Below, piece by piece: positions 16,991 through 46,215 of a DNA stretch of 64,000 nt. The stretch covers positions 50,468,001-50,532,000 of the forward strand of contig NC_059430.1 in NCBI RefSeq assembly GCF_021028975.2, in the 5' to 3' direction. This DNA comes from Sphaerodactylus townsendi (Eukaryota). The first letter of the stretch is position 1, and each line of letters starts with the position of its first letter. The notes beneath the pieces were generated by a model that was given only the letters and a program-made list of their open reading frames with translations, was not told the origin of the DNA and searched no databases. The position numbers and the translations under genes are program-made.

Positions 16991-18892
16991 GAGACAGAAA
17001 GAAATATGTCTGGGCACCTATGGTAGCTTTCAGCACTCTTGCTTGAGAAAATGACATCAAAAATTGCTGGCTGCCAGGGACTGGTGCTGAAATATGGGAC
17101 TAACTAAGGCTAAAGCAAGGACCACCATGCTCCATCCCTTTACCACCCCCTGCCTGCCACTTAATAAATAACACTGCAAGTTGCTAGAAATGGTCTGTTT
17201 ATCCAGGTGCATGTAAAATTCTGCTGTTCCAGGTTTCTGCCTGATGTTAAGGCAAAGATACACTATGTTTCTTTGTATGCACCTGGATAAACAGGAGTGA
17301 GTGAAATTGACAAGTGAATTTACTTTTGCAGGAGAAAATTGACAAGAGACTCCCACAGTAATAATTGTGTGTTACTACAGCTCTAATTTGTCAAAAAAGT
17401 GGGATTTTTTGGGGGGAGATACATGTTTCGGTTCCTTCAGGTAAAGACATCTGTTCCGGTAGGTTTTTTAAATTTGTTTTGCTTCCATTGTGTGTGGTAG
17501 TTCTCAATGATAGAAATGGAAGCTGAGAAATTTTTTGATTTGCTGCTTTAATGTAACAGCACAGTAACACTAGAGTGTCTATGCAAAAGAAAAAAGGGGG
17601 AAGGTTGTTCTTTTGCATCAAGAATGACATCCCATCACCATTAGAAGTAATACAATTTCAGCAATGGTATGTGGAATAAATGCAATGGAAAGGGCAAAGG
17701 GAAAAACAATGAGGGGAACAGAGGTGCACAGAATGATTTCACAGAAAACTTTTCCAATACAAATAGTTTGACTTCTGGGAAAATCTGTGATATGCTGTGC
17801 ATGTGGCAAAGGTCTCTGTCCCTTAGGAATTACAATCTTGAGGTGTTAGCTGGTAAATCTTTTTTTCTCACTCTTACCAGAGCCATTTGCATCTCTAAGG
17901 CCGTTTCCGCACGGGCAATCAATGACGTCGTGGAAACGGGAAAAGAAACGTCAGAACGAGAGCGTTCGCACGCGCAGCGACGGAGGTGCGCTGTTGCGCC
18001 ATCGCGAATACGCTTACCCGGCGCGAGGACACCGTATCCAAAAAATGCTTCGAAGCGCTCCTTTTCCATATGTGACGCACCGAAGCCGCAGTCGTGCGAA
18101 CCGGCGCCACGGAGGCGTTCTCAAACATGGCGCCTGCCAAATGATCTCCCGCAGTAGCGGCGGCCATATTGGGAAGGATGAACTGCTCCAGCGGCCATGA
18201 TGGTGAGGTCAGCAGCCACACTTTGACAGAGCTCCTCTTCAAGTGGCGTTGAGAGTCACGCATCCGCGCAGCTGTGAAGCTACATGATTGCACAGCTACA
18301 CAACCTCGAGTCTGAAGGGCGGCGAGGCGCCCCCTGGGCAGACAACGCTGCTGCCTTGATTCAGATCATGCATAACAGGACGCAAAGGTGGAGCCATGGT
18401 CTAAGACACTTCCCCTGTGCCCAATGGGGAGGGGGGAAAGTGTCTGTCCATCCCATTGTCACTTGAGGGCTTCCTGCCATTGGCCAGGAAGTTTGGAAAA
18501 ACTACCCAGCAGACTCTATTGCAGACGCACATCAGACACCACAGCATCAGGTGGATTTGGCTGGTGGCTCTGTGTGTTTGCCCACCCCAACAATGCCCAA
18601 TGAAAGGGCACCTGCCGAGCGGCAGCCAGGAAGAGGAGTCGCTTGGAGAGACAGGGAGACCCGTGACCTTTTGGAATTATGGGGGGAACCGCAAGTGCAG
18701 CGTTCTCTCGCTACGAGCCAACGCAACATAGATGTCTTTCAGCGGATAGCCCAGCAGATGACAGCTCGGGGCCACCGCCGGACAGCCATTGAGTGCCGCA
18801 CAAAAACAAAAGCCATGCGGTATGAATTCAAGCGTGTGCAGCAGCATAACCGAGGGACAGGCAATGAGAGAGCCACCTGTCCCTACTTTGAT

Positions 18893-19174: not shown

Positions 19175-20309
19175 GAGGCACCCTCAGCTGCTGCAGGCAC
19201 CCCAGCACCCAGCAGCCCTGCAGACTCAGGTGAGAGAGGAGGTTCTGCCCTCCACCTTGTTAAACACAAACTGGCATCCCGGAATGGCTGCCTACCCCTC
19301 CCTCCCTGTGAATGCATGAACCATGGGAACCAGAAGCCACACTGAGTTCTACTGACTGCTGCTCCCCCGCAGCACAGCTGGCCCAGCTGATAAGTGCAAG
19401 TATGTGCAGGGCAACAGGGAGGAATGGGGCACGTCAGGGTCACTGCCAAGGCCACTGGCATGCTGCCAGCCTCTGCCTCACAGAGGTGTGGTGCTCCTTC
19501 CATCCAGCAACCCCCCTTAATGAAAGTCACTTACTGTGTCCCACAGACATAACTGCCACCCAAGAGACAGACCCTTGTGAAGGACCATCCACACGGCCAC
19601 CCTCAGTTGCCTCAGGTAAGTGGCCACCCCACCTGGCCGTAGCTGCAGAGGGGAGAAGGGCTTCCTGTGTGTGCCTCATAGAAGTACAAGGGGCTGAAAT
19701 GCACTTTGTCCCTCTCTCTGACAGGAGCCGCATCAGAGTCACCCACCCAGGGGGAGGATGAAGACCAGGAGGGGGAGGAGCAACAGAGAGATGAGGAGGG
19801 AGATGGTGGTTATGGGGAAAGGCCACTCAGACAGCCCCCGCAGCGAGGTAAATCTCCACAGATGTCTGTATGGGTGGGTCCAGGGAAAGGGGGGGAGATG
19901 CAACCAACAGCCCTCCATTTCTCATCAACAGTCGGTCCTAGACGACAGCAATCGGAATCACCACCTCCAAGGGAAGAATCCCCAGAGAGACGACTGGTCC
20001 CACAGCCTCCGAAGGGGTGCTGTCATGGCAGAGATAGGCCGTCAGTTGCTAGAGCACTGTGCAGCTGACGCAGACAACCAGCGGCTGGCTCAGGAAGCAG
20101 AGCAGGAGTGGCGGCAGGACATTTCTGACCAGATGCAGCTGGATCGTGAGACTTTCCTCCTCACAGCAGCCCGCACCCATCGGGCTTTCCTCCGCACAGC
20201 AGCCCGCACCCACGAGCTCATGGCTGAGCGGACAGAAGTCCTAAGGAGAATGACAGACCTCAGCCTTCAGCAGCAAGGTGCCCGTGTGTGTGGGCGTTGC
20301 CAAGCAGCA

Positions 20310-21800
20310 CTGGCCCCCCTTCACCTGAGCTCCTCAGCAGCAGCCAGCTCCCGCAGCTAATGACACCCCCATCCCCTGTGCGAGGCAGATGTACTCAGAG
20401 GAGGGGACCAGCTGGGCCCACTTGCAGCCCAGTGGCCACCCACAGCCAGCTCATGGAGCCAAGCCACAGCCACCTCCTGGAGGCAGCTTGCCCACCTTCC
20501 CCTGAGCTCCTTGAGTGCAGCGAGCCCCTGGAGCCACCCACTCCCCCACCCCTTGTGCGAGGCAAGCGAGGCCAGAGGAGGGGGGCGGCTGGATCCACTT
20601 CTGCCACAGTGCTCACCCACAGCCAGCTGAAGGAGCTTGCTCGACCCCCTTCCCCTGAGCTCCTCACTTGCAGCCAGCCCCTGGAGCAGGCTGCTCCTGC
20701 ACCCCCTGTTCAAGGCAAGCGAGGCCCCAGGAGGGGGGCAGCTGGACCCACTGCTGCCACAGTGCTCACCCACAGCCAGCTGAAGGAGCTGGCTCAGCCC
20801 CCTTCCGCTGAGCTCTTCACTTGCAGCAAGCCCCCGGAGCAGGCTGCTCCTGCACCCCCTGTTCGAGGCAAGCGAGGCCAGAGGAGGGGGGTGGCTGGAC
20901 CCACTTCTGCTGCAGCACTCACCCGCAGCCAGCTGAAGGAGCCTGCTCGACCCCCTTCCCCTGAGCTCTTCACTTGCAGCCAACCCCTGGAGCTGGCTGC
21001 TCCTGCACCCCCCCGTTCGAGGCAAGCGAGGCCCCAGGAGGGGACCAGCTGGGAAGGCTTCATCCACTCTGGTTACCCACAGCCAGATGGAGGAGGATGC
21101 TCGGGCCCCTTCCCTGGTGCTCTTTCAGTTGGCAGCCAGCCCTGAGCTACTGCCTGCACCCCCCCGTTCGAGGCAAGCGAGGCCCCAGGAGGGGACCAGC
21201 TGGGAAGGCTTCATCCACTCTGGTTACCCACAGCCAGATGGAGGAGGATGCTCGGGCCCCTTCCCCTGCGCTCTTCAGTTGCAGCCAGCCCCTGGAGCTG
21301 GCTGCTCCCGCACCCCCCGTTCGAGGCAAGCGAGGCCAGAGGAGGGGACCAGCTGGGAGGGCTTCATCCACTCTGGTTACCCACAGCCAGATGGAGGAGG
21401 ATGCTTGGGCCCCTTCCCCTGAGCTCCTCATTTGCAGCCAGGCCCTGGAGCTGGCTGCTCCCGCACCCCCCCTGCGAGGCAGGGTGGGCCAGCGGGGGGG
21501 GTCCACCAAGAAGCCTTCATGCACTCTGGTCACCCACAGACAGCTGCAGGAGACATCTCGGCCACCTTCTCCTGAGCTCCACACCTGCAGCTTGTTCCTA
21601 GACCTCAAGTAACACCCTCCCCCCATGCAGCGGCATGGTATGCTCAGAGAGGGGAATCAGCTAGCCCAGCTCCCTCCTTGCTGCCCACCCACAGCCAGCT
21701 GCAGGAGCCAGCCCAGCCCCCGTCCCCTGTCCTAGTTACCAGCAGCCAGCTCCTGAAGGCAGCCACGGCCCCTCCCCCAGTGCGGCATCGGCGTAGCCAG
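20310..21800 (+). repeat. ~153-bp minisatellite encoding a 51-aa Pro/Ser/Arg-rich repeat
   Basis: The GGCAAGCGAGGCC-type motif recurs near 20558, 20711, 20864, 21018, 21169, 21322 and 21475. Unit peptide is about PPVRGKRGQRRGAAGSTSATVLTHSQLKELARPPSPELLTCSQPLEQAAPA. Confidence 0.93.
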
Positions 21801-24010: not shown

Positions 24011-24405
24011 TTCAGGGTGGGGGACGATCAACCCCCAAACAGCATTAATTTCACTGTTGTAAGTAAGGACCCCAGATTCTCCCTGTAAGGTAGACCTAGT
24101 TTAAAAAACCTTTGAAAGTGATGCTGTTTGGGGGTGGATTCCTGCATCACAGCTGCTGTCCCAGGGGATGGGGGGTGGGGGTGGGGGCCCAAAAATCAGC
24201 TTCTGCATCATGCTCCATTTCCCCTCCATGCCTTGGTCCAGAGGAGAGGGGCAGGGGAGGGCAGGGCAGGGGAGCTCCCATAGGCCATTCTGTAGGACTT
24301 GCATGCTATGCAGCAGGAACAGATCAGGCCGAGCCACTGGCACTCATGGCCCAGCCGCCACCCTCCCCCTATGGCACCGTGGCCGAGCTCTGAATAGATA
24401 CCCAG

Positions 24406-25813
24406 CTAGGGCCTCTCTGACAGCCTGCCCCTCTCGCCTGTGCGTATCATCCTGGGGGTTGTATGGGCGGCCAATGGAGGGATCTGCTGCTTCTTCCTGC
24501 TGGTGTGCTTCTTCTTCGCTAGAATTGGAGCGACCTGCTCATTGGGGAGATCTGGAGCTCTGTGGCCATGGCTCTCACACAGGTTGTGCAGCACCACGCA
24601 CGCCGCCATTACCCGAGGTGGCATTCTCGGTCTGACCCACAGACAGTTGAGAATGCATCTCCACCGCGCCTTCAGGCGGCCAAATCCATCAGCCTCCACC
24701 ACGCTTTGGCGCGGGGACAGATGTGAGTTGAAGTTTCGCTGCTGCGTTGGAAGGAACCCGGTAAGGTGTGAGCAGCCACGGCGCTGGGGAAAGCACCATC
24801 CTCAATACCACAGGGGGGTATGGACACGCCGCTGATTGTCAGCATGGGGTTTCAGGCAAGTAGATGCCCATGTCCATGGCTTGACAGAAGCAGTTCTAGA
24901 TGAAACACAAATGCATCATTGTTGCGAGCAGAGTAGCCAGTTTCAGCATTGATAAACATTCCGCGAGGTTGCCAGCAGGAGCTTGGAGGAAAAGTTTTTC
25001 GACACGATTAATGAGGCTGACCGGTGCTCCACCTGGGTTACAGATCCGATGACAGCCATCCACGGCCCCGATGCAGTGGGAAAGCCAAGGGCAGCAAAAC
25101 TAGCCATCACCTGTAGGGAAACAGACATTGGCACATAGGTTGGGGAGGTTGGCAGTACAGGGAGGGGGGATCTGCAGCTGCTGTTTAGTTGTAGTGGCAT
25201 AAGCATGTACAGCTCTGTCAGCACTTCCACAGCCATGGCAAACTCCAGGACACAGTGGCCAGTCCAACTCCAAACTGTTGGCCCACTTCACGATAGCTGT
25301 TGGCACTTGCTAGGTACCACAAGGCCATGGCCACGCGCTTTAGCATGGGAATGGCAGGACGCATATTGGTGTCTTGTCGTTCCAAGTGTGGACGCAGGAC
25401 ATCTGCGAGGTAAATGGCTGTTGCCTTGGCCATCCTGAAGTTTTGCACCCACTCCTCATCTGTCCAGACTGTCATTACAAGCACATTTAATTATGCCATT
25501 AAAGGTTTATATATATATATACAAGCACATCCCACCAGGTGTGGCTCTGGGGACCTATCCAATGGCGGGGGGTGTTGGGAACACTTGCGATAGCAAACCA
25601 GCGCAATATTGCGCGCCTACGGGGCCTGCGGTGCACTGTGGTGTCAGATTGAGTCACTAGCCCTTCGGTAAGATGGCGGCGTAGCCTCCCCACCAGACGT
25701 CGCATCAGCTGGCCTCTGCGTGCCATGAAGGTGTCTGTGGTTGAGGCGCCCTGCTCCTGCTCATCGTGCAGTACTTCCTGCCGCACCACCTCTCCCAGAT
25801 CCATGTCTGCCAT
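24406..25813 (-). pseudogene. Harbinger transposase (DDE_Tnp_4, HARBI1-like), disrupted
   Basis: Motifs reconstructed across frameshifts: WWDVLVMTVWTDEEWVQNFRM, RVAMALWYLASANSYREVGQQFGVG, GFPHCIGAVDGCH, GYSARNNDAFVF, DGAFP..WLLTPY, VVE..FGRLKARWRC and ACVVLHNLCE. Intron acceptor (ctacag) at 25111-25112. Confidence 0.92.
25476..25530 (+). mobile_element. Ultra-short 5'-truncated LINE 3' tail inserted in the transposase
   Basis: 11-bp TSD TACAAGCACAT (25476-25486 and 25520-25530) around TTAATTATGCCATTAAAGGTT(TA)n. The same TATGCCATTAAAGGTT ends the LINE near 60745. Confidence 0.85.
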
Positions 25814-25938
25814 GCAGACAGCAGCTAGCCGTATGGTTCCCTGGTTCCACTGAACACCTGAGCACGGAATGGAAACTGGTGGGAGGCGGCCAGACTACAG
25901 ATTGGGGGACGGACGAGCCCTCAGAATAGTTGCCTTGG

Positions 25939-26030
25939 CCAATCGTTCTGCTTGATGTCTGTGACATCAGTCTGCCACAACTTTGTGAGTGTTTAGCCCG
26001 GACAGGGCGGAGCAACATGCAGCATCCGCA
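25939..26030 (-). promoter_or_regulatory. Putative transposase promoter module, copy 1 (CpG-decayed)
   Basis: CCAAT at 25939 and TGACATC at 25962, upstream of the transposase ATG at 25813. Confidence 0.5.
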
Positions 26031-27259
26031 GCATTTTGTTCGGGATGGCAGCAGCAAACTGCTAAGGTGACTCTCATAATGATAATGACGGGTTTGCCTT
26101 AGGTTTGCTTCCGGGGCAACAATTCTATGGACTGCAAAACATGTACTCACCATCCCCTATTGTGTCAAATGGGATTTCAGAGAAGATAGGGACTGCACCT
26201 TTGAGGGTCCATTACTGGGGAGTCCATGACACAAACCTCACCAAATTGGTGCAGGCTCATTAGGAGAGTATTCTGCATATAGCGGCACAGTTTTGTAATT
26301 CCAGCTGACCAATTGCACCCTGCCAGCAGGCACAACCTGAAAATCTCCATGTTAGATCTTTTACATCCAGTCCTGGATGTAACGTGAGGATTTCAGTTCC
26401 TCAGCTTAGCAGAAGAAGAGATAGGATCCACCCCCCCCTTCTCTCCCACAGAGGATCCAAGAGACAGGCAATCTCCTTGTCCCAGCCAAACCCCACCTGT
26501 AAGGGAGGTGGTGATGAGAGACCTGGCATAATCTGTGTATGGGCCAAGGTCACCCAGCTGGCCTGTGTGGGAGTGCACAGGCTGAGCTGAATTCCCCAAA
26601 TACACATGTGCAGTGCAGTCATGTTAGCTGGGAGCAGAAACATGTTCCTAAGCATTGTAATGTCCCTGCTCTGAAACACTGCATCACTTTGCAAGTTCCA
26701 TTGCTTTCCCCACCCCCATCCCCTGTGCGAGGCAAGTGCGCTCAGAGGAGGGGGGTGACTGGGTCTGCTTTGTCCACGCTGGCCACCCACAGCCAGATGA
26801 AGGTGGATGTGTGGGTCCCATCCCCTGAGCCCTTCACCTGCAGCCAGTGCGTGGAGCTGACCAATCCACCACGAACATGGGCTTCCAATCACCTTTCCCT
26901 TCCTCCCCTCACAACAAGCACCCTGTGAGGTGGGAGGGGCGTAGAGAGCTCCGAGAAGCTGCGACTAGTCCAAGGATACCCAGCTGGCGTGTCTGGGAGT
27001 GCACTGGCTACTGTGAATCATCCAGACCAGCATGTACAGCTCTGTCAGCATAGCCCTAAACCACTAAAGCTGTCACTGTGCCAGTGATGCCGTGTCAGGG
27101 TGGGGGATGAGCCATCCCCAAACAGCATCAATGTCCATGTTGTGCTGTCTGGAGACATGGCATTGTCCCTTTAAGGTGGCGTTAATGTAGGAGTTAGGAC
27201 TGTCCAGGTAACATAATATTGGCAAAGATGCTGTTTGAGGGTGGACTGTAGCATCACAT

Positions 27260-27394
27260 NNNNNNNNNNNNNNNNNNNNNNNNNNNNNNNNNNNNNNNNN
27301 NNNNNNNNNNNNNNNNNNNNNNNNNNNNNNNNNNNNNNNNNNNNNNNNNNNNNNNNNNNNNNNNNNNNNNNNNNNNNNNNNNNNNNNNNNNNNN
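27260..27394. other. Assembly gap (N)
   Basis: Run of N inside the Harbinger. Confidence 1.
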
Positions 27395-27900
27395 CCTGCA
27401 GACATATGCCTCTGAAGGAGTGGTGCCAGGGGTAGAAGTGTGAAGAGCATGGCCACGCCGTCGGAGCTTCAGACAGGCCCCCCCCCTTCACATGTGTCCC
27501 TGGTGATTTCAGTGCATGGACAAGCACCTTTCACAGATCCCTCTTGCCTATGCAGATAGTGGCTGCCCATACAAGCTGCGGTGTCACTGGTGACAAAACT
27601 GGGACTGACAGGAGCAGGGAGGAGAGCCAGACTGAGGGGGGGGGGGCAGCCAGAACATCAAGCTAGTCACGCGCATGGTCGCAGGCGCGTACCGGCGGAG
27701 GATTGGGCGACCGCCCATCCGAAAGAGAGGCGGTGCTGCCTCCCCCACAGAAGGCTCATCAGCTGGCCGCTGTGTGCCATGCAGGTGTCCGTGGCCACCC
27801 GCACTTCGTACTGCTCCTGCATGCCTGCGATCCCTGCCTGCTGGAGCATCTCTCCCTTATTCACGTTGCCCAACCAGATGGCAACTCTCCATATGATTAC
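27395..27900 (-). pseudogene. Second, degenerate transposase 5' remnant
   Basis: TDTCMAHSGQLMSLLWGRQHRL matches TDTFMARRGQLMRRLVGRLRRHL of the main transposase. Adjacent DNA is homologous to 34230-34420. Confidence 0.7.
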
Positions 27901-27998
27901 TAGTGCCACTGGGCACCTGACCAGGGACGGAAAACAGCTGGGGGGAGAGTGGATGACAGATTGGGTGAACAGTCGAGGCGGCAGGACACTCCCCTCTG

Positions 27999-28095
27999 CC
28001 AATCATGCTGCTGAGCAGCCGTGACGTCGGGCTGACGCGGCTTCGCGAACGCGCTGCTCCGACAGGGCGAAGCGACACGCCGCTCCCACAGCGCG
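27999..28095 (-). promoter_or_regulatory. Putative transposase promoter module, copy 2
   Basis: CCAAT at 27999 and TGACGTC at 28022, then GCGGCTTCGCGA. Confidence 0.5.
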
Positions 28096-29034
28096 TTTTT
28101 TGACCAAGCAGTGCCAAACTTCTAGTGAGTGTTTGGGGGGCCCTCTTGAAGATACTCACTGCAAGTGGTGAGGTTTGATTTAGGGTAGCCGAAGGTATGG
28201 ACTCCCAAAGGGGGTGTCCCTATCCCCCATTATTCCCAATGGGAGCTATTGGGAGATGGGGGCTAAGGTTTTGAAGGTCCATAACTTCGGCCCCCCTGGA
28301 CTAAACTGCACATAAGTTGGGGGGTTCCATAAGGACAGTCTCCTAACGATCTGCTGGAACTGTGGTGCTGATATGTCTAACAATGTGTACGAAACCAATG
28401 AAGAGCACAGCGCATACAGACAGTTCAATTCGTGAGACCTTCGAATCAGGATGAGTAAGCAGAGAAGGAAATAGCAGTAATAATTACATGGCACAGAAGT
28501 CAAGCACAACTAGCCACTAAAGCTAGTCAATCAGCCAACCCTTATTGCCAGACCTACATCGGGGGCAATTCTCACTCCCCAAGGTCACGGGGGATCCACG
28601 TTGCTTCACATATTTATTTTCATTTTAATAATATGGTATCCTGGGGGGGCGGTGGTGGGCATTTGCACATGTTCTTGGGAAGCATCCACAGATTTTGGAA
28701 CAACTGCTGAGTGGCCTCGTGCCGATGTGCCCACATTTAGTGGATTCCGACAGAATCCGACATAGGGAGGTGAAAAAGAAATGGTGGCCACGGAATTTCC
28801 CCAAGCTTGTTAATCAGGCTGTGCGCCGCATCCAGAGTGGTTCGCCGGAGGCTCGAGTCAACATTCGAGAGTACAGTTGTCGACCCCGCAAATGGCGGCG
28901 CGTACCTCACGTGGCCGCGTAGCTCCAGTGCGTGTGTACGTTTCCCGTTTTGGGTTCAAATGGGCCAATGGAGTTTCTGGAAAGTTAACTGCCCAAAGCC
29001 CCCCTTCCGTTTTCCCTTTATTCTCTGGTCTGCC

Positions 29035-29147
29035 ATGGAAGGAGCTAGACATGGAGTGGCCTGGCAGCCGGAGGAACTGAACATCATGTTCAGCACGATC
29101 CGGAATTGCGGATACGCCGCACTGTTAATGGGCAGCCTAGCTCTACG
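29035..29147 (+). pseudogene. Truncated Myb/SANT-like 5' fragment (Myb3), inverted paralog of Myb2
   Basis: MEGARHGVAWQPEELNIMFSTIRNCGYAALLMGSLAL compared with Myb2 GVYWQAQEEVTIL..RVKDREDAPWLSLMASTGL. Upstream TTGGGTTCAAATGGGCC (28950-28966) matches the reverse complement of 32701-32717 at 16/17. Confidence 0.65.
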
Positions 29148-29685
29148 GTAAATATGGTGCTAGTGAAAGTGGAATGGGGAAAGGTGACCTATGTTCCATG
29201 CTCCTTGGATTACAAGGTCCTAGATGGGTACAATAACTGCACGACAGATGTGATGTCACCGTGCTTTTCTGTTCTAATCAGAGAGAGGCTAATCCTTGGC
29301 AGCATCTCCTTACCCATGTTAAAGGACATGAAATATGGGGGTAAAATGAGTCCACTGTGTTCCCTGTGGTGTTTCCCCTATTGTCTAGCACCAGCCTAAT
29401 TGGGTGAGTGGTGCATCCACTGCACAATGAGGGGTGGAGAATTGGTGCCAGAAAGGGAAGGGGAGGGGACCCAGCATCTGGGCATGGCCCTGCCACCCTA
29501 GCGGAGGGAGGGGGAGGGGAGGGGCTTGTGAGTGTGTGCAGGGACTGTGGAGATGCAGGAACACAAAGATGAGACAAATGCAAACAGTTAAAAAGTTTTA
29601 TGTATTGTCGAAGGCTTTCACGGCCGGAATCACTTGGGTGCTGTGTGGTTTCCAGGCTGTATGGCCGTGTTCTAGCAGCATTCTC

Positions 29686-29728
29686 TCCTGACGTTTCGCC
29701 TGCATCTGTGGCTGGCATCTTCAGAGGA
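29686..29728 (-). ncRNA. Minimal hammerhead ribozyme motif (antisense arm)
   Basis: Reverse complement of TCCTGACGTTTCGCC...GGCATCTTCAGAGGA gives the same intact core. Confidence 0.75.
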
Positions 29729-29753
29729 TCATGGAGTTTCTGAAATCTTCAGA

Positions 29754-29796
29754 TCCTCTGAAGATGCCAGCCACAGATACAGGCGAAACGTCAGGA
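29754..29796 (+). ncRNA. Minimal hammerhead ribozyme motif
   Basis: TCCT-CTGAAGA-TGCC-loop-GGC-GAAAC-GTC-AGGA: CUGANGA and GAAA cores, GUC cleavage triplet, short helices I and II. Confidence 0.75.
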
Positions 29797-30101
29797 GAGA
29801 ATGCTGCTAGAACACGGCCATACAGCCCGGAAACCACACAGCACCCAAGTTAAAAAGTTTTATTGAACACACACAATGACAAAAGCACAACTTCCCCAAC
29901 AGTCCCTGATACCCTCCCCCAATCCCACAGCACAACCCCCCTAACCCACAACAAGTCCCACCTAGCCCACAACAGCCCACCCTAACCCTCCAGAACCCCC
30001 AACACACAACAACAACACCCTAACCCACAACAAGCACTTGCCCACAACTATTGTGCAATGTCCTTGCCCCAGTGCCCCTCTGTCCAAAATCCCACACGCC
30101 A

Positions 30102-32625
30102 TCACTGCGAGTCCTCCGAACTAGAGGGCAGACCTGCCAGGTGCGGGGCAGGCCCACCCCACTGTGGGGCTTCTGGTGGCGCCCCTGGAGCAGAGGAGGG
30201 AGGACTGGCTGGCACTGTGCTGGCCTCCTCCAGGTCAGAGGGCACAGGGGTGGTGCTGCAGTTGGTGGAGGAGGAGGCAGCCTGCTGTGTCCCACTGCCT
30301 GGTCCTGAGCTTAGGACCAGCGGTTGCTCTGTGGGGGGTGGAGGGGAACGATCCCCTGCCACCTGCCGCCGCTCTACCACTGCCAGCCGCTGCTCGACCG
30401 CTGCCAGCCGCCGTCCCATGCGTGCCAGTCACCGATCCATGTGAGCCACTGCAAAAGAGGAGCATAATTAGCTGGGGCAGCTCTTCCCAGCTGCCCATGG
30501 CCTGGCCAGCTGGCATTGTTGACAGTCATTCCCGCTTCCCAATGTGACTTCCATCACTGTGCCACACCCAGAGCAGGCTGCAGCAGAGCAGTCAGAGGGA
30601 GTCTGTGCAATCTGTTCTTACACAGCTGGAAGCAGTTGCAGTGCTGCTGCTGTGGTTGGTGGCCTGCTGCTGCCATTCCAGATGGCCCTGGAGGGGAGGA
30701 AGTTGAATGTCACATTTACTGGGCCACAACACTTGTACATGGGGGGTCGGGGGGGGACATGATCCTCCATGTCATGGCCTCTGCAACTGGCTGGAGCAGG
30801 GATGCTGTTGTACCCATGCACGGGGGAGGGGCCACAACCCCACCTGCCCTCAGGTCATGACTGCCCCTCCCATAGCCCTGTTGTGGCCACAATAGGTATA
30901 TGAGAAGCTGAATGAGCTCAGTCATGGCACACTCCCTTGACCTACCCTTCTCTCTCCCTCCCCTCTGGGCAGCAGCATAGATGGAAGATGGAAGATAGTG
31001 CACATTCCCCCCTTGGCCACTGTGTGGCTGGCATCCACCCCCCCCTCCCACAGCATCACTTTCAAAGCTTGTGCACCCAGGGAGTCATTGCTACTGTGGA
31101 TTAGTGGTGAAGGGCAGGTGCACTCTGAGCTGCAGGATCTGGTTTTGTTTCCCTGCTCTGCCACCTGAGCTGTGGAGGCTCATCTGGGGAATGCACATTA
31201 GCCAGTGCCTCCCACACACAGTTGCTGGGTGACCTTGGGCTAGTCACAGCTTGTGGGAGTTCTCTCATCCACACCCATCTCACAGGGTGTGTGGTGTGAG
31301 GGTGCAGGGTCAAGGAAAGAAAGGGGGGATGTCACTCCAAACTACTACTGCGCTTGTACACTGAGGACCTCGGTTTGTCATTTTCAATCCATGGGAATGG
31401 GAGTGTCTGCACAAAAGTAATATGTGTGAATTTGGATGGTGCCTGCTTTCAGGGGTGCAATTGTTCAGCTACAAGCACCAAATTGCCAGGTTATATGTGA
31501 GGGACTCTTCTAAGGATAACACAAAGGTTTGGTGAAGTTTGGTTCAGAGGGCGCACAGGTATGGACTCCCAAAAGTGTTGTCACGATCCTCCATTAGCTC
31601 CCATTTGAAAAAATGGAGGTCAGTGGCACCCCTTTTGGGAGTCTGTATCTGTGGACCCTCTGAACCACAGCTCACCAAATCTGGCTGCCATCATCAGGAG
31701 GTTCCCCCTGAAAAATCCCTGCAGTGTAGTGCAACTGGTTCAAGCAATGCAGGCCAGGCAAAATGCACTTCAGAAAAACAGCCAAATGGTGGCCACACCT
31801 CCAAATGGAGAGGATGGCTTCACATGTGAAGGGGGGAGCATTGAAAACCATGAATTCCCCCCCACCTGAGCACATGAGCTGAAGGTGCGCATGTGCGAGG
31901 CTGCATGTCACCGCACCTGCACACACGCACACTCACGACACCGCATCCCCCCGCAAGCGCCCTGCTTACCTGGTTGCTGGCTTGCCTCCACTGGACGCTC
32001 TTCCATAGAACTGGAAGAGCTCTGGTGTGGGGCCGCAGCCTCGCCTCTCTCCTCGCCTGGCGACACGGAGTCCCCACCAGAGGAGATTTCTGCCTCCTGG
32101 CCCTGGACTGGGCCTTCCAGTGGCTCCCGTGGGGGTGCCAGGGCGTGGCGTCGAGCGGCGGCGCCTGTCGGAAACAAATAACAATCAGATGGGATCCTAC
32201 ACAGGGAACCCACCTGCGCACAATCGCGTGTGCGCACGGTCGCGAGCTCGAGTAAACGCGCACTCACCTTCAGGCCGATGGTCCACCCAACGGGGCTCCC
32301 CAGCCAGCCGCCACAGCTGGCGCATGGCAGCAAAATGCGGGGGCCAAGCGGAGCGGCGAGGGTGGCCTTCATAGGCCTCCATTGCAGAGAAGAAGTCCCT
32401 TTTGAGGGCCTTCCACTTGGTGCAGGCTTGCACCTCTGTACGGTGGAAGCCTGCACGCTGGAGTGCCCTCGCCACCGCCCGGAACGCCCGTCGATTGGGC
32501 AGTCCCGTGCTGGCCATGAGGGATAGCCAAGGCGCGTCTTCGCGGTCCTTGACGCGCGCGTGAGGCGAGGATGGTGACCTCCTCCTGCGCCTGCCAGTAG
32601 ACTCCCACGCCTGGGTGCACCTCAT
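30102..32625 (-). pseudogene. Second Myb/SANT-like gene (Myb2), spliced
   Basis: GVYWQAQEEVTIL...NRRAFRAVARALQRAGFHRTEVQACTKWKALKRDFF...PPHFAAMRQLW. GT-AG exons 32625-32268, 32164-31970, 30687-30622 and 30448-30102, all phase 1. The last exon is coiled-coil-like (RRLAAVEQRLAVVERR) with one TGA, probably from CGA. 5' frameshifts. TATATA at 32667 and AATAAA on - at 29859-29864. Confidence 0.82.
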
Positions 32626-33584
32626 GGCTGTCCCGGGAAATGGCTGGGAAAAGGGAAGGGACCCTCTATATAGAGAGTAGATCTGGCCCTGTAGCAATTC
32701 GGCCCATTTGAAGCCAACAGACTTCCAGCGGCTACGGCAGCCTCAGAGGGACTCCTTTTTAAAAATCACGCCGCCATGGGGATGCGCTCGCAGCCCTCGC
32801 GAATTCCCACGCCATCAAGGCAAGAGCCGCGGAGAGGGCGCACAGATCCCTCCTCTTCGGCTGCGGTGACGCACCCCTGTTTCCCGAAAAGAAATGAAAT
32901 ACACACAACGCTAAAAGTAGTTTGTAGAAATTGTCATTTGCACTTAGTACAGCCAAGGGTGTGCATTTTCGCCCCACAGATCAAAAGCACCACTCAGGCC
33001 CCCACTTGGCATACTCTGCAACACCGCCGCTGGAGCCACAGCCAGGAGATCAGGCTGCCCCAATGCCAGTCATTGGATGGCAGCAGCCCACACCCTTTGT
33101 TGCTGGTGGCCAGCTCTGAAGCGATACCCAGGTAGGGCATTTCTGACAGCCTGCTCCTGACACCTGTGGGTGTCAACCTGGGGGTTGTACAGATGCCCAT
33201 GTGGTGGCATAGGCACATCTTCCTGATGCTGCCCTGCTTCTTCAGTGTAGCAGTATAATCTATCAATATATAGAAGAAGAGTTGGATTTATATGCGCCCT
33301 CCATTTCTGTCCTGCAGGAGACTCAAAGGGGCTGATATTGCCCTTCCCCCCTGGCATAACAGACCCCTGTGAGGGAAGAGGTGGTTGCCTGAGAGAACTG
33401 AGAGAGGCTGTGTATGGGCCAAGGTCACCCAGCTGGCATGCGTGGGAGTGCTCAGCTGAAGCTGCATGTCCCAGATACACATGTGCAGCTCCATCAAGTT
33501 AGCAGGGAACAGACACCTGTTCCTCAGTTTTGGAATGCCCATGCTCTCCAACACCACAACATCACTTTGCCATTGGATGCTGTT

Positions 33585-33940
33585 TTTCGTAAGAACTGCT
33601 CTCCAGCGAACTATAATTCCTATCGAAGTCGCCGTCAGCATGGCCAATTGGCCATGCTGGTAGGCTGATGGGAATTGTAGTTCCCGAACATCTGGAGAGC
33701 CGCAGGTTCCCTACCAGTTGCAGTAGACTTCCGCGTTTTCCGATAGCGAACTGATAATCATCAAGTTTCGTCAGCATGGCCAATTGGCCATGCTGCAGGG
33801 CGATGGGGAATTGTAGTCCTGAACATCTGAGAGCCAAGAGGTTCCTGGCCCTGGCGTGGGGAGTAGGGACACCGGCTCAGATGTTTTAGGAACGCTAATT
33901 CCCATCAGCCTCTCTGTCAGCATGGCCAATTGGCCATGTG
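33585..33940. mobile_element. About three tandem, garbled copies of the palindromic hAT MITE
   Basis: Repeated CAGCATGGCCAATTGGCCATG and GGGAATTGTAGT motifs shared with 43001-43148. Confidence 0.7.
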
Positions 33941-34476
33941 ATGAGCTGATAGTAGACCTGGCCTCGACATTCTACCTGGCGATGGTCTTTATTCCTAGGC
34001 AGCATCAATGTCCACATTTTGCTACCTGGGGACATGGGATTTTACCTCTCAGGTGGCCTTAGCGGAGCAGCTCAGACTCTCCAGTTGACACACCATTGTC
34101 AGTAATGCTGTTTGAGGGTGGCCTGCAGCAACACAGCAGCTGCCAGGGGGAGGGGCAGGGTAGGGCAGGGCAGTCTCCACTCCCTGCCAGCAGAGTGATG
34201 TTTTTTAGGAGCTGGCCCAGGGTTGTGGCCAGGATGGCCACACCTTTGGAGCTTTGAGAAGTTTGGTCACTTCCCCCCCTCCCCCGCCCCTTAAGTGTGT
34301 CTCTGGTGATTTCTCTGAATGGTCCAGCACCTTCCCCAGATTCGTATAGGCTGCACAGACAGTGGCTGCCCATACAAGCCGTGGTGTCACAGGTGACATA
34401 AACTGGGACTGACAGTAGCTGGGAGGGGAGGCGATGACAGCTGGGGGTGGCCAAAACTTTAGGGTAGTCACGTTGG

Positions 34477-34575
34477 CCAATCGCGCTGCTGTGCGGGCAT
34501 GACGTCGGCCCTGCGCGGCTTCGCGAGTGCGCAGCCGCAACGGAGCGTAGCAAGAAGCCACTTCTGCAGCGCCTC
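34477..34575 (-). promoter_or_regulatory. Putative promoter module, copy 3, in the right subterminal region
   Basis: CCAAT at 34477 and TGACGTC at 34500, then GCGGCTTCGCGA. Same 23-bp spacing as the other two copies. Confidence 0.5.
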
Positions 34576-37064
34576 CGTGCGAACTGGCACATTTCTCGCG
34601 CGGACTCGCGGACGTTAGCAGCTCCGGGCCTTTCAAGGTCTGTGCGAACGCTTTTTTTTTCGAGAGGCGTCAGCCGATTTCTCGGTACGCTCATCTGGTT
34701 AAGTGCGCTGCTTTCTCGGCCGTCGCGGAAACGGCCTTCCGGGTTTGAAAGTACTCTGCTTGTAGATCAATGACTCAGCCTCTGTATTTTGCCTCTTGGC
34801 ATTTGCCAACTTGCAGTAAGCTTCCTGGACATAGGAAATAATATAGACATGGTCTCTAGAGTGGAAGGCTCATCTTCACACAAGTTGTTAATTAAGTCTC
34901 ACCTGGCACCAATATACTTTCCTTTAGGCACTGCAATGTCTTTACATAGCCTGTTAACTAAGGGGATCCATCTTTTAAAGCTGTTTTATGGTCTTCTCAT
35001 AGTCTGAGGACTGTTTTATCAATATCAGTTTATATGCTCTATTTTGTTTGTGTTTTTATGCCCTGGCTTGGTTTTTGACATTTTTATTTACTTGTTTTTA
35101 TTTCACTTCATTGACTTTATTTGTTTTATTGGCATGACTTGTTTTTATTGACTTTGAAAGGAGTTTTTCTTTATTGTTTGACTTGTGAGCTGTCTTGCAT
35201 AAGACTACAAAGTTAACATACAGATTGTTAACATTAATAAATAAAAGCTGGACAATCTTGCTTAATTTACACTGCAATCCTAAGTACACTTGAATCCTTC
35301 TTCTTGCTGCCAAATGCTACCATATTAGAAGTAGCTTAGTCCCTGACAAAAAAGGTGAGAAAATCTGAAAAGCTTGATCAATTAGAGGTTTCCCTGTCTT
35401 GGTGTTACTGGAAGGTGTGGGTGCCCATTGCAGCCATTATTGCGTATTCTCTTGAATTATATTCCCAGTTCTCTAACCTAGGGTATTCTTTTGCTTTCCA
35501 ATTTGCTGCACTCTAGCTTTTGTCAAATATCAAAAACAGTTCTTCTGAGTTTCTTGAAATGTTCTTTGGTAATATGCCTAGTAGCTCAGTCTTGGCGAAT
35601 TTTTGCTTTTCCCTCCCCATTTTTCTGAATGACCATTACATTCAGAAACCACCAACTTTATTGCACTTTCAATATTTTCCTTTGTAGCATTCTTTGTACA
35701 ACAAATTGTAGCACTTCCACTGACACCATTTGGGAATATAATTACCGTGCTCACGTCACTGTCACAAGATGGGAAATAATGTATTTACATACTCCCCATT
35801 ATATTTTGTTCAAGGAAACACCCTATAATTTTTCAAAATGCATTTCACATGGATCAAGAGTTACCAGGAAAATAAGATCACAACTCAGTTGCAAAATGAG
35901 CACATTAACCACAAGGCTATCCTTTCTCTTTGTTTGTTATCCAGCATAAATAAGAGAGGAAAGCAGTCTCTAATTGATCTTTTGATTTTTTTTCTTTTTA
36001 GGTAGCAAAAAGAACTAATAAAGAAAAGCAAAAGCAATGCATTAATTGTAAGAGAGGGTTCCTTTCATGAAGTTTCCCTTAAGAATGGAATTGACTGGGC
36101 ACATCTCTCTTAAATTCAATACAAGCATGGAAATGAAGGCAATTAGGAATTTGGAAAATGGAATGAACTGCTTTCCGTCCACAGTTAGGATTTCTATCTT
36201 GTCTCCTGGACAACTGCACTGATACAGTTATTAGAAACTGTTAAATTAACTAGTAGTTGATAGATTAACGAGAAGATACTAATTCATGACCAGACAAGTG
36301 GCACCCAGGGACATAGGTTACCCCATGACCCTCTGGCAGGTATGCCACTGGTTGCCTGTTAGTGGCAGGAAGAAGGAACATCTATGGAGATCTCTGGAAC
36401 AATATTCTTCTTTGCTGTATGGAAATGGACTTATGTGCTGAATGTTATTATCAAGAAGCTCACCAGAAATGCTGAGATAGTACAATGTGTATGTAAAATT
36501 ATAATTAGATTCTAGATAGACTTACAGTTACATCCGAGGTGGGTGGAATCTGCTGCTGGGAGCTGCTTGGGCCACCGCTGGCATATTTGCCCTCACCAAG
36601 GCAGTTGCCCTGGTATTGGGGTGGATCCACTGACAGGTGGCTGCACAGCCCTCCATGGCGGTAGGATGCGGCACTGAACGCCACACCAGCATCCGTACAC
36701 CCATGATACCAGTGTAGTGGGGTAGTCTGGGAGTGTGGCCAGGGGAGGAACCAACAGTAGTCAGCTTCCACCCTGCTATTGCCGTGTTCCACTGGCAACC
36801 AGGGCTTTGAATGTATGACACCTTTATGGTGGTGTGAGTTCATTAAGCTCAGTGGGGGCTTTCCAGAGGTAGAAAGGCTTTTTTGCATTTTTATCCTTCC
36901 CATGCCACTGGAAAGCCCTTTTGGGAATGACAGGCCAGTATAGCTGTGGCACTGCAACCTGGCACCCAGCCTTTTGGATGGGGCTGCCCATCAGGTTTTT
37001 GGTTTTGTTTTCCTTGTGTGGACTGGGTGCTTTATAGTTTGTGGCACTCTGTGAACTAATAAAT

Positions 37065-40884: not shown

Positions 40885-41125
40885 GGGGTGCTGTGTGGTT
40901 TCCGGGCTGTTTGGCTGTGTTCTAGCAGCATTCTCTCCTGACCTTTCACCTGCATCTGTGGCTGGCATCTTCAGAGGATCTGATAGTAGGAAAGCAAAGC
41001 AAGTGGAGTATGAAAGGAAAGCAAGTGGAGCATTCAGGAGAGAATGCTTCTAGAACATGACCATACAGCCTGGAAACCACACAACACCCCAGTGATTCCG
41101 GCCGTGAAAGCCTTCGACAATACAC
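40885..41125. mobile_element. Short Penelope-like insertion
   Basis: 13-bp TSD TGATGTGGTCATT (40872-40884 and 41126-41138). Same family as 29602. Hammerhead core mutated (GAAAG). Confidence 0.82.
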
Positions 41126-43296: not shown

Positions 43297-44304
43297 CAGT
43301 GATGTGATATAGATTTTTAATGGGGTGGGTTTGGGGGTGGGGGCATAGCCACCCCTGGAGGCATGACCATGCCTCCACAAACCACACCCCCATCCTCAGT
43401 GCTTATAAAAGCAGCTCTCCGAGGCCAGGGACAGCAGACTCCCTGCTCCGCCTGACCCCCCCCCACCGGCTGGGCTCCCAGCTGGCAGCCCCTTCTGCCT
43501 TCCCTACGGGCAGAGGCGTAGCTAGGAAAAATGGAGCCTGGTGGAAAATCTGAGTTTTGCGGGAGGGCCCATGGGTGGCTGCTGTGATGCTGGAATCCAC
43601 CCTCAAACAGCATCACTTTCAATGGTGTTTAAACTAGGGAGCTCAAATTCTCCTTTTAAATCTACCTTAAAGGGACAATCTGGGGTCCCCAGTTAAAACA
43701 ACATTGAAAGTGATGCTGTTTTGGAGTGGATTCTTCCCCACTCTGAAACAGCATCACTTTCACTGTTTAAAATGGGGATTCTTCCTTTAAATCCATCCAG
43801 ATTCTCCCTTTGAAATCCATGGAGAAAAGCCGTGGATTTAAAAGGAGAATCTGAGAAATAATGGGGAGTGCTCTGCTGTCCAGGGGGTGCAATTAGTTAA
43901 GTTAGCAGCATCATATTTCTCTCAGGGCATCATTAGGGAGAATGTCCTGATTATACTACCCAGGTTTGGTGAAGTTTGGTTCAGGTGGTCCAAAGTTATG
44001 GACTCCCTCACAAAGGTGTAGCCCCTATCTTCTATTAGCTCCCATTTGGAAACAATGGAGTATGGGGCACCCCTTTGGGATTCCATGGGGTGGTATCATC
44101 AGGAGGAGTCTCCCCCAAAAATCCCTGAGAAATTTTGGTGCTGCTTATCCTAAAACTACTGCACTCCCCTGTGCCCAGGCCAAAAAACTGAAAAGGACTA
44201 AAAAAATTCAAAAAAAAAACCACAAGCGGGGGCCAGGAAGCTTTGGACATGTATTATCTTGGGGTTTGAACCTGGGAACCCCCCCCCCTTTACGTACATC
44301 CTTG
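43297..44304. mobile_element. ~1-kb non-autonomous hAT-like element
   Basis: 8-bp TSD GTAAAAGG (43289-43296 and 44305-44312), imperfect CAG...TG termini, and it interrupts the CR1. Confidence 0.75.
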
Positions 44305-46060: not shown

Positions 46061-46215
46061 NNNNNNNNNNNNNNNNNNNNNNNNNNNNNNNNNNNNNNNN
46101 NNNNNNNNNNNNNNNNNNNNNNNNNNNNNNNNNNNNNNNNNNNNNNNNNNNNNNNNNNNNNNNNNNNNNNNNNNNNNNNNNNNNNNNNNNNNNNNNNNNN
46201 NNNNNNNNNNNNNNN
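46061..46215. other. Assembly gap (N)
   Basis: Run of N at a SINE tail. Confidence 1.

What the first reader, a model, noticed from the sequence alone, without database searches (positions are those of the whole stretch)
30102..32720. Myb2: a divergent second Myb/SANT gene with its own promoter, phase-1 introns and polyA signal
The SANT-like exon differs markedly from Myb1: W-QAQEE rather than W-RDRET, and a PPHFAAMRQLWRLAGEPRW tail. The architecture is parallel: Myb exon, two low-complexity exons, then a coiled-coil exon, with all introns phase 1 and internal exons of 195 and 66 nt that preserve frame. It has TATATA about 42 nt upstream and AATAAA downstream. Coiled coils in both proteins suggest possible Myb1-Myb2 heterodimers (inference).
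Basis: partly seen in the sequence, partly recalled or inferred. Interest (0 to 1): 0.78.

Follow-up and report, generated by a model that had tools for sequence, protein, structure and literature searches.

The report
Broken Harbinger transposon Myb gene copy
This stretch is a real but disabled copy of a four-exon Myb/SANT DNA-binding gene that a gecko Harbinger "jumping gene" carries just downstream of its transposase; intact sister copies elsewhere in the genome show the full protein, and it lies inside the same inverted-repeat ends as a second, different Myb gene, whereas the papers read here describe one Myb-like gene per element.

Summary
The gene model is real. On the minus strand there are four exons (32625-32268, 32164-31970, 30687-30622, 30448-30102) with GT-AG phase-1 introns, internal exons of 195 and 66 nt, TATATA 42 nt before the ATG and AATAAA after the stop. 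Exon 1 passes Pfam Myb_DNA-bind_4.

This copy is broken. The first helix (W-QAQEE) lies in a different frame from the rest of the domain. An in-frame TGA (30431-30429) cuts off the helical exon and the tail.

The genome is Sphaerodactylus townsendi. At least 16 of its predicted proteins belong to this family, including an intact 315-aa RefSeq model. In intact members the layout is Myb domain, disordered linker, heptad helix, conserved tail. Relatives are multi-copy in other geckos.

Three chimeric gene models from other loci, plus a transposase 3' tail at 33195-33040, place this gene directly downstream of a PIF/Harbinger transposase. Myb1, transposase and Myb2 lie within one TIR pair (17897-17914 / 34738-34720), but the interior is rearranged and holds an assembly gap.

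RNA reads gave no splice junctions, so expression is untested.

The scan reported this three-gene Harbinger before on other DNA (s1-750847).

The parts
32667..32672 (-). TATATA hexamer 42 nt upstream of the ATG (candidate TATA box, not conserved)
   Evidence: There are only 3 TATATA loci in the 16.8-kb unit. The X1 contig lacks letters at 32671, 32673 and 32675.
32268..32625 (-). Exon 1: ATG plus Myb/SANT-like domain (helices 2-3 and tail in the ATG frame)
   Evidence: Pfam PF13837, 39.8 bits, profile 28-89/89. It is 100% identical to P0001 and 85-88% identical to P0002, P0003 and P0006.
32552..32614 (-). First helix of the Myb domain (GVYWQAQEEVTIL), out of frame with the ATG
   Evidence: P0005 residues 4-23. 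Related contigs lack the window's extra letters at 32621, 32603 and 32585.
31970..32164 (-). Exon 2, 195 nt, Ser/acidic low-complexity linker, phase 1
30622..30687 (-). Exon 3, 66 nt (GPSGMAAAGHQPQQQHCNCFQL), phase 1
   Evidence: It matches P0001, P0005 and P0007.
30102..30448 (-). Exon 4: heptad helix (LARMGRRLAAVEQRLAVVERRQ) plus conserved Ser/Pro tail, up to the family-frame stop at 30104-30102
   Evidence: 82% identical to P0005 residues 127-256 and 58% to P0006. In the model of P0006 the helix spans residues 203-231.
30429..30431 (-). Premature in-frame TGA where paralogs have Arg or Gln; it ends the annotated 212-aa product
29859..29864 (-). AATAAA, 238 nt after the stop
   Evidence: There are 5 such hexamers on this strand in 16.8 kb, so chance is not excluded.
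31096..31316 (.). High-copy SINE-like repeat inserted in intron 2
   Evidence: blastn matches at 54050-53863, 45785-46006 and 24011-23810. Read depth there is enormous.
31525..31700 (.). Palindromic MITE-like repeat in intron 2
   Evidence: It matches itself in inverse and also matches 43962-44080 and 63421-63591.
33040..33195 (-). Remnant of the transposase 3' end (…DTHRCQEQAVRNALPGY…) directly upstream of Myb2
   Evidence: Homologous to 24320-24470, the end of the transposase ORF. P0003 from another locus reads from the same tail into Myb2.
24409..24801 (-). Transposase C-terminal piece (DDE_Tnp_4); the rest of the gene up to about 26153 is in frameshifted pieces
   Evidence: PF13359, 30.1 bits, cut-off 24.8. 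Pieces are listed. The HTH piece at 25364-25239 is 86% identical to P0004.
34720..34738 (-). Right terminal inverted repeat
   Evidence: 18 of 19 match to 17897-17914
17897..17914 (+). Left terminal inverted repeat
29017..29145 (+). N-terminal fragment of a second Myb2 subfamily (MEGARHGVAWQPEELNIMF…), in the opposite orientation
   Evidence: 59% identical to P0012 and 55% to P0011

Best explanation
Window 32672-29859 (minus strand) is a decayed copy of the Myb/SANT-like (trihelix, Myb_DNA-bind_4) accessory gene of a PIF/Harbinger DNA transposon family of the gecko Sphaerodactylus townsendi.

In intact copies the four-exon gene encodes a protein of about 315 aa with four parts:
- an N-terminal three-helix DNA-binding domain;
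- a disordered Ser/acidic linker;
- a helix of about 30 residues with a 3-4 hydrophobic heptad pattern;
- a conserved Ser/Pro-rich tail.

The gene sits immediately downstream of, and co-oriented with, the transposase gene.

By analogy with the Harbinger3_DR Myb-like protein (inferred, not shown here), the protein would bind sites near the element's ends, bind the transposase N-terminus, bring it into the nucleus and recruit it to the ends. The C-terminal helix would serve oligomerisation or partner binding.

The copy in this window cannot do this. Small insertions right after the ATG put the first helix, with its conserved Trp and Glu, out of frame. A nonsense codon at 30431-30429 removes the helix and tail. 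The neighbouring transposase is also frameshifted. The whole 16.8-kb unit is therefore a dead, rearranged element.
For: Gene and domain:
- Pfam Myb_DNA-bind_4 scores above its cut-off for exon 1 and for the intact paralog P0006 (46.8 bits, profile 3-89).
- The AlphaFold model of P0006 has pLDDT 94-98 over residues 10-110, a helix at 203-231 and disorder elsewhere.
- Its nearest folds are Sap1, NgTRF and the GT-1 trihelix (Z 7-8.4).

Family:
- At least 16 predicted S. townsendi proteins belong to it.
- Between P0006 and P0009 the Myb domain is 83% identical and the linker 55%.
- Multi-copy relatives exist in Eublepharis macularius, with identical 375-aa proteins at several loci, and in other geckos.

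Transposon context:
- A TIR pair matches 18 of 19.
- A DDE_Tnp_4 piece scores 30.1 bits.
- A transposase tail remnant lies at 33195-33040, just upstream.
- Chimeric gene models from other loci join transposase parts to this Myb gene: P0003 (Tnp C-tail + Myb2), P0004 (Tnp HTH + Myb2) and P0009 (Tnp exon 1 + Myb2).

Defects in this copy:
- The frame change is shown.
- The TGA is shown.
- Related contigs lack the window's extra letters at 32621, 32603 and 32585.

Mechanism of Harbinger Myb-like proteins: as summarised from Sinzelle et al. 2008 in PMC9392472 and in PMC8437027.
Against: - No RNA junction reads were seen. Only thin cover lay on exon 4, and it came from other family copies.
- No paralog DNA could be fetched, so splice-site conservation and dN/dS are untested.
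- No clean 3-bp target-site duplication flanks the TIRs (TAA on the left, TTC on the right).
- DNA binding, transposase binding and oligomerisation are inferred only. The homodimer job gave no answer.
- An ATG-frame ORF of 212 aa is still open, and the depositors annotated it as a protein.
Confidence: 0.8

Rival explanations
1. Myb1 and Myb2 do not belong to one canonical three-gene element. The 16.8-kb unit would be a composite of two or more Harbinger copies, each with one Myb gene, produced by nesting, partial duplication or mis-assembly. 'Second Myb gene' would then be an artefact of this locus.
For: - Three transposase-exon-1-like copies are present (34572-34461, 28094-27709, 26034-25652), along with two transposase 3' tails.
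- A fragment of another Myb2 subfamily lies on the opposite strand at 29017-29145.
- An assembly gap at 27260-27394 sits inside the duplicated block.
- In my data only Myb2 is linked to the transposase by independent loci. Myb1 is linked only by the TIR pair of this window.
Against: - Only one TIR pair was found, and it sits at the outer ends.
- A 9-mer motif, CGTGCGAAC, occurs only in the two subterminal regions.
- Myb1, with its repeat tail, recurs in at least one other locus (P0129).
- An earlier report of this scan (s1-750847, not re-tested here) describes a compact 9.3-kb element with the same three genes.
Confidence: 0.25
2. The locus is a working gene. The 212-aa ATG-frame product (P0001) would be made and function as a truncated Myb/SANT protein, for example as a regulator or repressor of the element, or as a domesticated host factor.
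For: - An ORF of 212 aa is open across four exons with good splice sites.
- The depositors annotated it.
- Host genes that fuse this domain type to KRAB or SCAN exist in squamates (P0013, P0015, P0042).
Against: - The product lacks the nearly invariant W10 and E14 helix of the family, as well as the conserved helix and tail.
- The out-of-frame first helix is still recognisable, and the post-TGA reading frame is still 82% identical to P0005. Both point to recent decay rather than a new design.
- No RNA reads lay on exon 1.
- The partner transposase is broken.
Confidence: 0.07
3. The match is a chance ORF or a gene-prediction artefact with no real Myb gene behind it.
For: The sequence is GC-rich and yields many long ORFs on both strands.
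Against: - Pfam scores above its cut-off.
- Paralogs are 85-100% identical and share the same exon boundaries.
- The big protein search returned 124 relatives, and the 20 looked up by name were from squamates, apart from one koala protein.
- The fold is predicted with confidence.
Confidence: 0.01

Closest known systems
Myb-like (SANT/Myb/trihelix) protein of animal Harbinger elements, e.g. Harbinger3_DR of zebrafish (Sinzelle et al. 2008, as summarised in PMC9392472)
   Same: - A separate gene beside a DDE_Tnp_4 transposase, inside TIRs.
- A three-helix Myb/SANT-like DNA-binding domain with bulky aromatic residues.
- The expected role is binding the element's ends and importing and recruiting the transposase.
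   Different: - No sequence relative outside squamates and a koala protein was among the 20 hits I looked up by name.
- It has a four-exon, phase-1 structure, a C-terminal heptad helix and a conserved Ser/Pro tail.
- The element also carries a second, unrelated-looking Myb_DNA-bind_4 gene (Myb1, 25% identical).
- Its function was not tested here.
Solo-ORF and deleted Harbinger variants (Harbinger-Snek of sea kraits, PMC8437027)
   Same: The Myb2 copy here follows a transposase that has been deleted down to its 5' region and its last ~150 nt. This resembles the 'DNA-binding-protein-only' variants produced by large internal deletions.
   Different: - It belongs to a different, gecko-specific lineage.
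- This unit also retains a second, frameshifted transposase copy and Myb1.
Domesticated Harbinger Myb genes of vertebrates: NAIF1 and MSANTD1-4 (PMC9392472)
   Same: - The same broad domain clan (Myb_DNA-bind_4/5).
- From my own knowledge, MSANTD4 is also named for C-terminal coiled coils, which would be a similar layout. This was not checked here.
   Different: - Those are single-copy, syntenic, conserved host genes.
- This one is multi-copy, lies inside TIRs and is disabled.
- Only weak feature-level resemblance was seen (NAIF1 cluster score 0.79).
Plant trihelix factor GT-1 DNA-binding domain (PDB 2ebi, 2jmw)
   Same: It belongs to the same Pfam family and has a similar fold in the model of P0006 (Z 6.7-7.0, 76-78 residues aligned, 20-24% identity).
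   Different: - It is a host transcription factor, not a transposon gene.
- Z values in this range are common for small helical domains.

Membership tests
Pfam PF13837 Myb_DNA-bind_4 (Myb/SANT-like, trihelix) | HMM score above the curated gathering threshold | tested here: met
   Window exon 1 scores 39.8 bits against a cut-off of 27. The intact paralog P0006 scores 46.8 bits.
Pfam PF13837 Myb_DNA-bind_4 (Myb/SANT-like, trihelix) | Complete three-helix domain in one reading frame, including the first helix with the conserved Trp and Glu | tested here: not met
   - In the window's ATG frame only profile positions 28-89 are matched.
- The W-QAQEE helix lies in another frame.
- The feature is met in paralogs P0002, P0005, P0006 and P0009.
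PIF/Harbinger Myb-like accessory gene | Encoded next to a DDE_Tnp_4 (PIF/Harbinger) transposase gene | tested here: met
   - A DDE_Tnp_4 piece at 24409-24801 scores 30.1 bits against a cut-off of 24.8.
- A transposase tail remnant at 33195-33040 lies directly upstream.
- Chimeric models P0003, P0004 and P0009 from other loci join transposase parts to this gene.
PIF/Harbinger Myb-like accessory gene | Lies between the element's terminal inverted repeats | tested here: met
   17897-17914 matches 34738-34720 at 18 of 19 positions, E 7e-4 in a 600 x 600 nt comparison. The interior is rearranged.
PIF/Harbinger Myb-like accessory gene | 3-bp (TWA) target-site duplication flanking the TIRs | tested here: inconclusive
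   The left flank is TAA and the right flank is TTC, and no other register gives a match. This may reflect mutation or rearrangement.
PIF/Harbinger Myb-like accessory gene | Binds the element's ends and the transposase; required for transposition | not testable with these tools
   Only a candidate subterminal 9-mer was seen: CGTGCGAAC, three times, all within about 200 nt of a TIR, against 0.04 expected.
Coiled-coil / leucine-zipper-like oligomerisation helix | Long helix with a 3-4 heptad spacing of hydrophobic residues, kept across relatives | tested here: met
   - The model of P0006 has a helix at 203-231, pLDDT 73-88.
- W, M, L, M, L and L are spaced 3-4-3-4-3 in MWARMERRLFTMERRLSAL.
- The window reads L, M, L, M, L, V, L, V across the TGA.
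- The motif R-L-x-x-[VLM]-E-x-R is kept in P0005, P0008, P0009, P0011, P0012 and P0017.
Coiled-coil / leucine-zipper-like oligomerisation helix | Self-association or partner binding | tested here: inconclusive
   The complex-prediction job on two copies of P0006 193-242 scored 0.04 against a mark of 0.32. The verdict was 'no answer'.
Domesticated Harbinger-derived host gene (NAIF1 / MSANTD type) | Single-copy, intact, outside any transposon, with conserved orthologs | tested here: not met
   The gene is multi-copy, lies inside TIRs, and is frameshifted and truncated here.

The most novel reading that the evidence does not exclude
This gecko Harbinger lineage is a genuine three-gene transposon that needs two different Myb/SANT proteins. 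One is the transposase-linked Myb2, with a zipper-like helix. The other is Myb1, with a 51-aa repeat tail. They might serve one end each, or work as a hetero-oligomer that bridges the ends. In addition, Myb2 may be expressed partly by splicing from the transposase's first exon to an acceptor just upstream of its ATG, as the P0009 model and the Py-tract/CAG at about 32645 suggest. One promoter would then yield both the transposase and a transposase-N-terminus/Myb2 fusion.
Probability: 0.25. Interest if true: 0.65.

Novelty: new variant of a known kind. Interest (0 to 1): 0.45.

Why it matters
The Harbinger papers read here describe elements as two-gene systems: a transposase plus one Myb-like protein (PMC8437027, PMC9392472). 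A lineage that carries two dissimilar Myb/SANT genes between one TIR pair would be a new layout. It could show how accessory DNA-binding proteins divide the work of end recognition, nuclear import and regulation.

It would also bear on squamate host genes. KRAB, SCAN and zinc-finger genes in squamates contain the same domain type (P0013, P0015, P0042), so the element family may be a source of such domains.

For genome annotation the practical point is plainer. P0001 and many 'uncharacterized proteins' of S. townsendi are transposon genes or their wrecks, not host genes.

The copy in this window adds no new biology by itself. It is a dead exemplar that documents the gene's exon structure and its position behind the transposase.

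Tried and rejected
- **The look-up of encoding contigs:** No DNA of paralogous copies could be fetched, so there is no dN/dS, no splice-site conservation across copies and no TIR/TSD comparison.
- **RNA evidence:** three RNA-seq runs of a related or the same gecko ('organism C') gave depth of at most 7 on exon 4, about 1 on exon 2 and none on exon 1. No joints were seen. The reads carry variants of other copies (30391 T>C in all 10 reads of X11, plus the single X12 read). The result is inconclusive.
- **Complex prediction:** two copies of P0006 193-242 gave 'no answer' (0.04). This is not evidence either way. The Myb1-Myb2 and Myb2-transposase pairs were not tested, because only one job is allowed.
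- **Foldseek against PDB:** no hit reached E <= 0.001. The VIA second look gave middling Z values for Myb, SANT, trihelix and homeodomain folds.
- **Self-blastn of 29800-33000 against the window:** no second DNA copy of the Myb2 exons was found, only SINE- and MITE-like repeats.
- **Pfam on exons 2 and 4 and on most transposase pieces:** nothing was found.
- **ESM Atlas:** only generic Myb_DNA-bind_4/5 clusters below 0.9.
- **Literature:** no paper was found that describes Harbinger elements with two Myb genes, or gecko Harbingers. This is absence in the searched library only.
- **Joined model:** the spliced model was searched exon by exon, by reference. The joined protein was not assembled or searched.
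- **Other limits kept:** The N runs at 27260-27394 and 46061-46215 were left untouched.
Full report
**What is there.**
The finding lies on the minus strand. Reading 32760 to 31900 and the exon script gives this layout:
- TATATA at 32672-32667.
- ATG at 32625.
- Exon 1 at 32625-32268, with donor G|GTGAGT.
- Exon 2 at 32164-31970 (195 nt), with acceptor …tttccgacag| and donor |GTAAGC.
- Exon 3 at 30687-30622 (66 nt), with acceptor …cccctccag| and donor |GTAAGA.
- Exon 4 from 30448, with acceptor …ctcttttgcag|.

Every intron is phase 1. AATAAA lies at 29864-29859, 238 nt after the stop at 30104-30102.

The deposited annotation of the genome independently uses the same junctions. P0001 (UniRef A0ACB8FNW8, 212 aa, Sphaerodactylus townsendi) is 100% identical to these exons. 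That hit also identifies the genome as this gecko's.

**It is a Myb/SANT gene, but this copy is broken.**
Exon 1 scores 39.8 bits against Pfam Myb_DNA-bind_4 (cut-off 27). The match covers profile positions 28-89 only.

The missing first helix is present in the DNA, but in another frame. 'GVYWQAQEEVTIL' (32614-32552) is read in a different frame from the one that holds the ATG and 'LMASTGLPNRR…PPHFAAMRQLWRLAGEPRW'. Paralogs read straight through: MSAPRRGVYWQAEEVTILLRTVRDRGHAWLLMASTGLPNRR… (P0002, P0003, P0005, P0006).

Contigs of an independent run (X1) laid on the window lack single letters at 32621 and 32603, and three letters at 32585. These extra letters therefore belong to this copy and not to the related copies in that run.

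The family's nearly invariant W10 and E14 are thus lost from the ATG-frame product.

Six codons into exon 4 there is a TGA (30431-30429): LAHMDR*LARMGRRLAAVEQRLAVVERRQ…. Paralogs have Arg or Gln at that position. Beyond the TGA the frame stays 82% identical to P0005 down to the family's normal stop. The decay is therefore fairly recent. The annotated 212-aa protein is simply the model ending at this premature stop.

**The family.**
Word-based and exhaustive protein searches gave only 124 relatives at E <= 0.001 among 1.84 billion representatives.
- Every hit above about 44% identity whose source was looked up is from S. townsendi, which has at least 16 predicted proteins in the family.
- One of them is an apparently intact 315-aa RefSeq model (P0006, LOC125431295).
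- A second subfamily exists (P0011 and P0012, 44-47% identical).
- At 28-45% identity come multi-copy proteins of other squamates.
- Eublepharis macularius has one cluster of 14 near-identical members, with the same 375-aa protein annotated at several loci on different chromosomes.
- Other relatives come from Heteronotia, Gekko kuhli, Hemicordylus, Rhineura, Sceloporus and Zootoca.
- Host-type fusions to KRAB or SCAN also appear (P0013, P0015, P0042).

Alignments show one architecture throughout: Myb domain, Ser/acidic linker, a helix with the motif R-L-x-x-[VLM]-E-x-R, then a Ser/Pro tail.

The AlphaFold model of P0006, built on a 45-sequence alignment, gives pLDDT 94-98 for residues 10-110, disorder for 125-200, one long helix at 203-231, and a disordered tail. 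The domain resembles the Sap1, NgTRF and GT-1 trihelix DNA-binding domains (Z 7-8.4).

In the helix, hydrophobic residues follow a 3-4-3-4 spacing, as the sequence shows directly. Self-association remains unproven, since the homodimer job gave no answer.

The Myb domain is more conserved than the rest. It is 83% identical between P0006 and P0009 against 55% for the linker, and 56-58% against 24-26% towards the second subfamily. This is the pattern expected if the domain has been under constraint, but it is not a dN/dS test.

**Transposon context.**
- The GC-rich block 17.9-34.7 kb is bounded by an 18-of-19 inverted repeat, 17897-17914 against 34738-34720.
- A frameshifted PIF/Harbinger transposase lies on the minus strand at about 26153-24409. 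Its C-terminal piece passes DDE_Tnp_4 (30.1 bits), and its HTH piece is 86% identical to the N-terminus of P0004.
- Immediately upstream of Myb2, at 33195-33040, lies a second copy of the transposase's last codons and 3' flank (…DTHRCQEQAVRNALPGY…). It is homologous to 24470-24320.
- Further upstream, 34526-33378 repeats the region that precedes the transposase (28048-26505).

On the minus strand the order is therefore: TIR, transposase 5' region, a large deletion of the transposase body, the transposase 3' end, then Myb2.

Three gene models from other loci tell the same story:
- P0003 reads from the transposase C-tail into Myb2.
- P0004 joins the transposase HTH to the Myb2 domain.
- P0009 joins transposase exon 1 to a point just before the Myb2 ATG.

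A fourth model, P0007, runs from Myb2 exons 1-3 into a transposase-exon-1-like stretch, as in the window, where the block at 28094-27709 follows Myb2 on the minus strand.

Myb2 is thus the transposase-linked Myb gene of this family. Myb1 (18551-19345, plus strand; Pfam 64.7 bits) is only 25% identical to it. Myb1 recurs with its 51-aa repeats in at least one other locus (P0129).

**Is it a 'second' Myb of one element?**
Both genes lie within one TIR pair. A 9-mer, CGTGCGAAC, occurs only in the two subterminal regions (3 hits against 0.04 expected).

The interior, however, is rearranged:
- There are three transposase-exon-1-like copies.
- A fragment of another Myb2 subfamily lies on the opposite strand at 29017-29145.
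- An assembly gap lies at 27260-27394.
- No clean TSD is present.

An earlier report of this scan (s1-750847) describes a compact 9.3-kb three-gene element on other DNA. I give the composite-locus rival 0.25.

**Expression and promoter.**
Three RNA runs gave only thin cover on exon 4, with variants of other copies, and no junction reads. The TATATA is one of only three such loci in 16.8 kb, but it is not preserved in the one related contig that overlies it. AATAAA is not rare enough to be evidence. 'Own promoter' is therefore unproven. A polypyrimidine tract with CAG at about 32645, together with the P0009 model, leaves open expression by splicing from the transposase's first exon.

**Mechanism.**
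What is shown: the domain identity, the architecture, the linkage to the transposase, and the defects of this copy.

What is inferred from Harbinger3_DR as summarised in PMC9392472: intact family members bind the element's ends, bind the transposase N-terminus, import it and recruit it, with the helix mediating oligomerisation or partner contact.

The papers read here describe Harbingers as two-gene elements (PMC8437027; PMC9392472). I found no paper on two-Myb Harbingers or on gecko Harbingers.

- The spliced model was searched exon by exon, by reference. The joined protein was not built or searched.
- N runs were left alone.

**Verdict.**
The finding is a real, correctly drawn gene. It is a dead copy of a transposon gene, and the scan has already described the interesting part, the two-Myb Harbinger layout, elsewhere. 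Interest 0.45.

Noticed in passing
window 29017-29145 (+): This is an N-terminal fragment (MEGARHGVAWQPEELNIMFSTIRNCGYAALLMGSLAL) of a second Myb2 subfamily, 59% identical to P0012. It lies on the strand opposite to Myb2, inside ORF 28807-29151.
   Followed up: partly
window 34572-34461, 28094-27709, 26034-25652 (-); gap at 27260-27394: Three diverged copies of the transposase first-exon region (MADMDLGEV…-like) lie inside one TIR pair. The blocks 26505-28048 and 33378-34526 are 76-82% alike. An assembly gap sits inside the duplicated block, so part of the 'triplication' could be rearrangement or mis-assembly.
   Followed up: partly
window 17964-17972, 18093-18101, 34576-34584 (one-mismatch copy at 34641-34649): The 9-mer CGTGCGAAC occurs three times in 64 kb, against 0.04 expected. 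All three copies lie within about 200 nt of a TIR. It is a candidate subterminal binding site for one of the Myb proteins.
   Followed up: partly
window ~32645 (-), between TATATA and the ATG: A strong polypyrimidine tract followed by CAG (tcccttcccttttcccag|cc) lies 20 nt upstream of the Myb2 ATG. The P0009 model from another locus joins transposase exon 1 to about this point. This hints at alternative splicing from the transposase promoter.
   Followed up: no
window 24409-26153 (-): The Harbinger transposase is itself split over several frames: exon 1, the HTH piece, the 'CIGAVDGCH' piece and the C-terminal DDE_Tnp_4 piece. It is a pseudogene too.
   Followed up: partly
window 29632-29850; also 40886-41093 and 54938-55092: A near-perfect palindrome (99-nt arms, 98% complementary, 21-nt loop) lies just after the Myb2 AATAAA. 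It recurs elsewhere in the window and looks like a hairpin-forming MITE-like repeat.
   Followed up: no
window 26657-26872 (+): One unit of the 153-nt (51-aa) Myb1 tail repeat sits alone, about 5 kb from the main array (20310-21774), inside the duplicated block upstream of the transposase.
   Followed up: no
window 33605-33941: Local repeats are built around the palindrome CATGGCCAATTGGCCATG, with three copies spaced about 140 nt apart. They lie between the transposase 5' region and its 3' remnant.
   Followed up: no
proteins P0022 and P0130-P0142 (Eublepharis macularius): Identical 375-aa Myb2-like proteins are annotated at several loci on different chromosomes of the leopard gecko. This is the signature of a young, recently active element family there.
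   Followed up: partly
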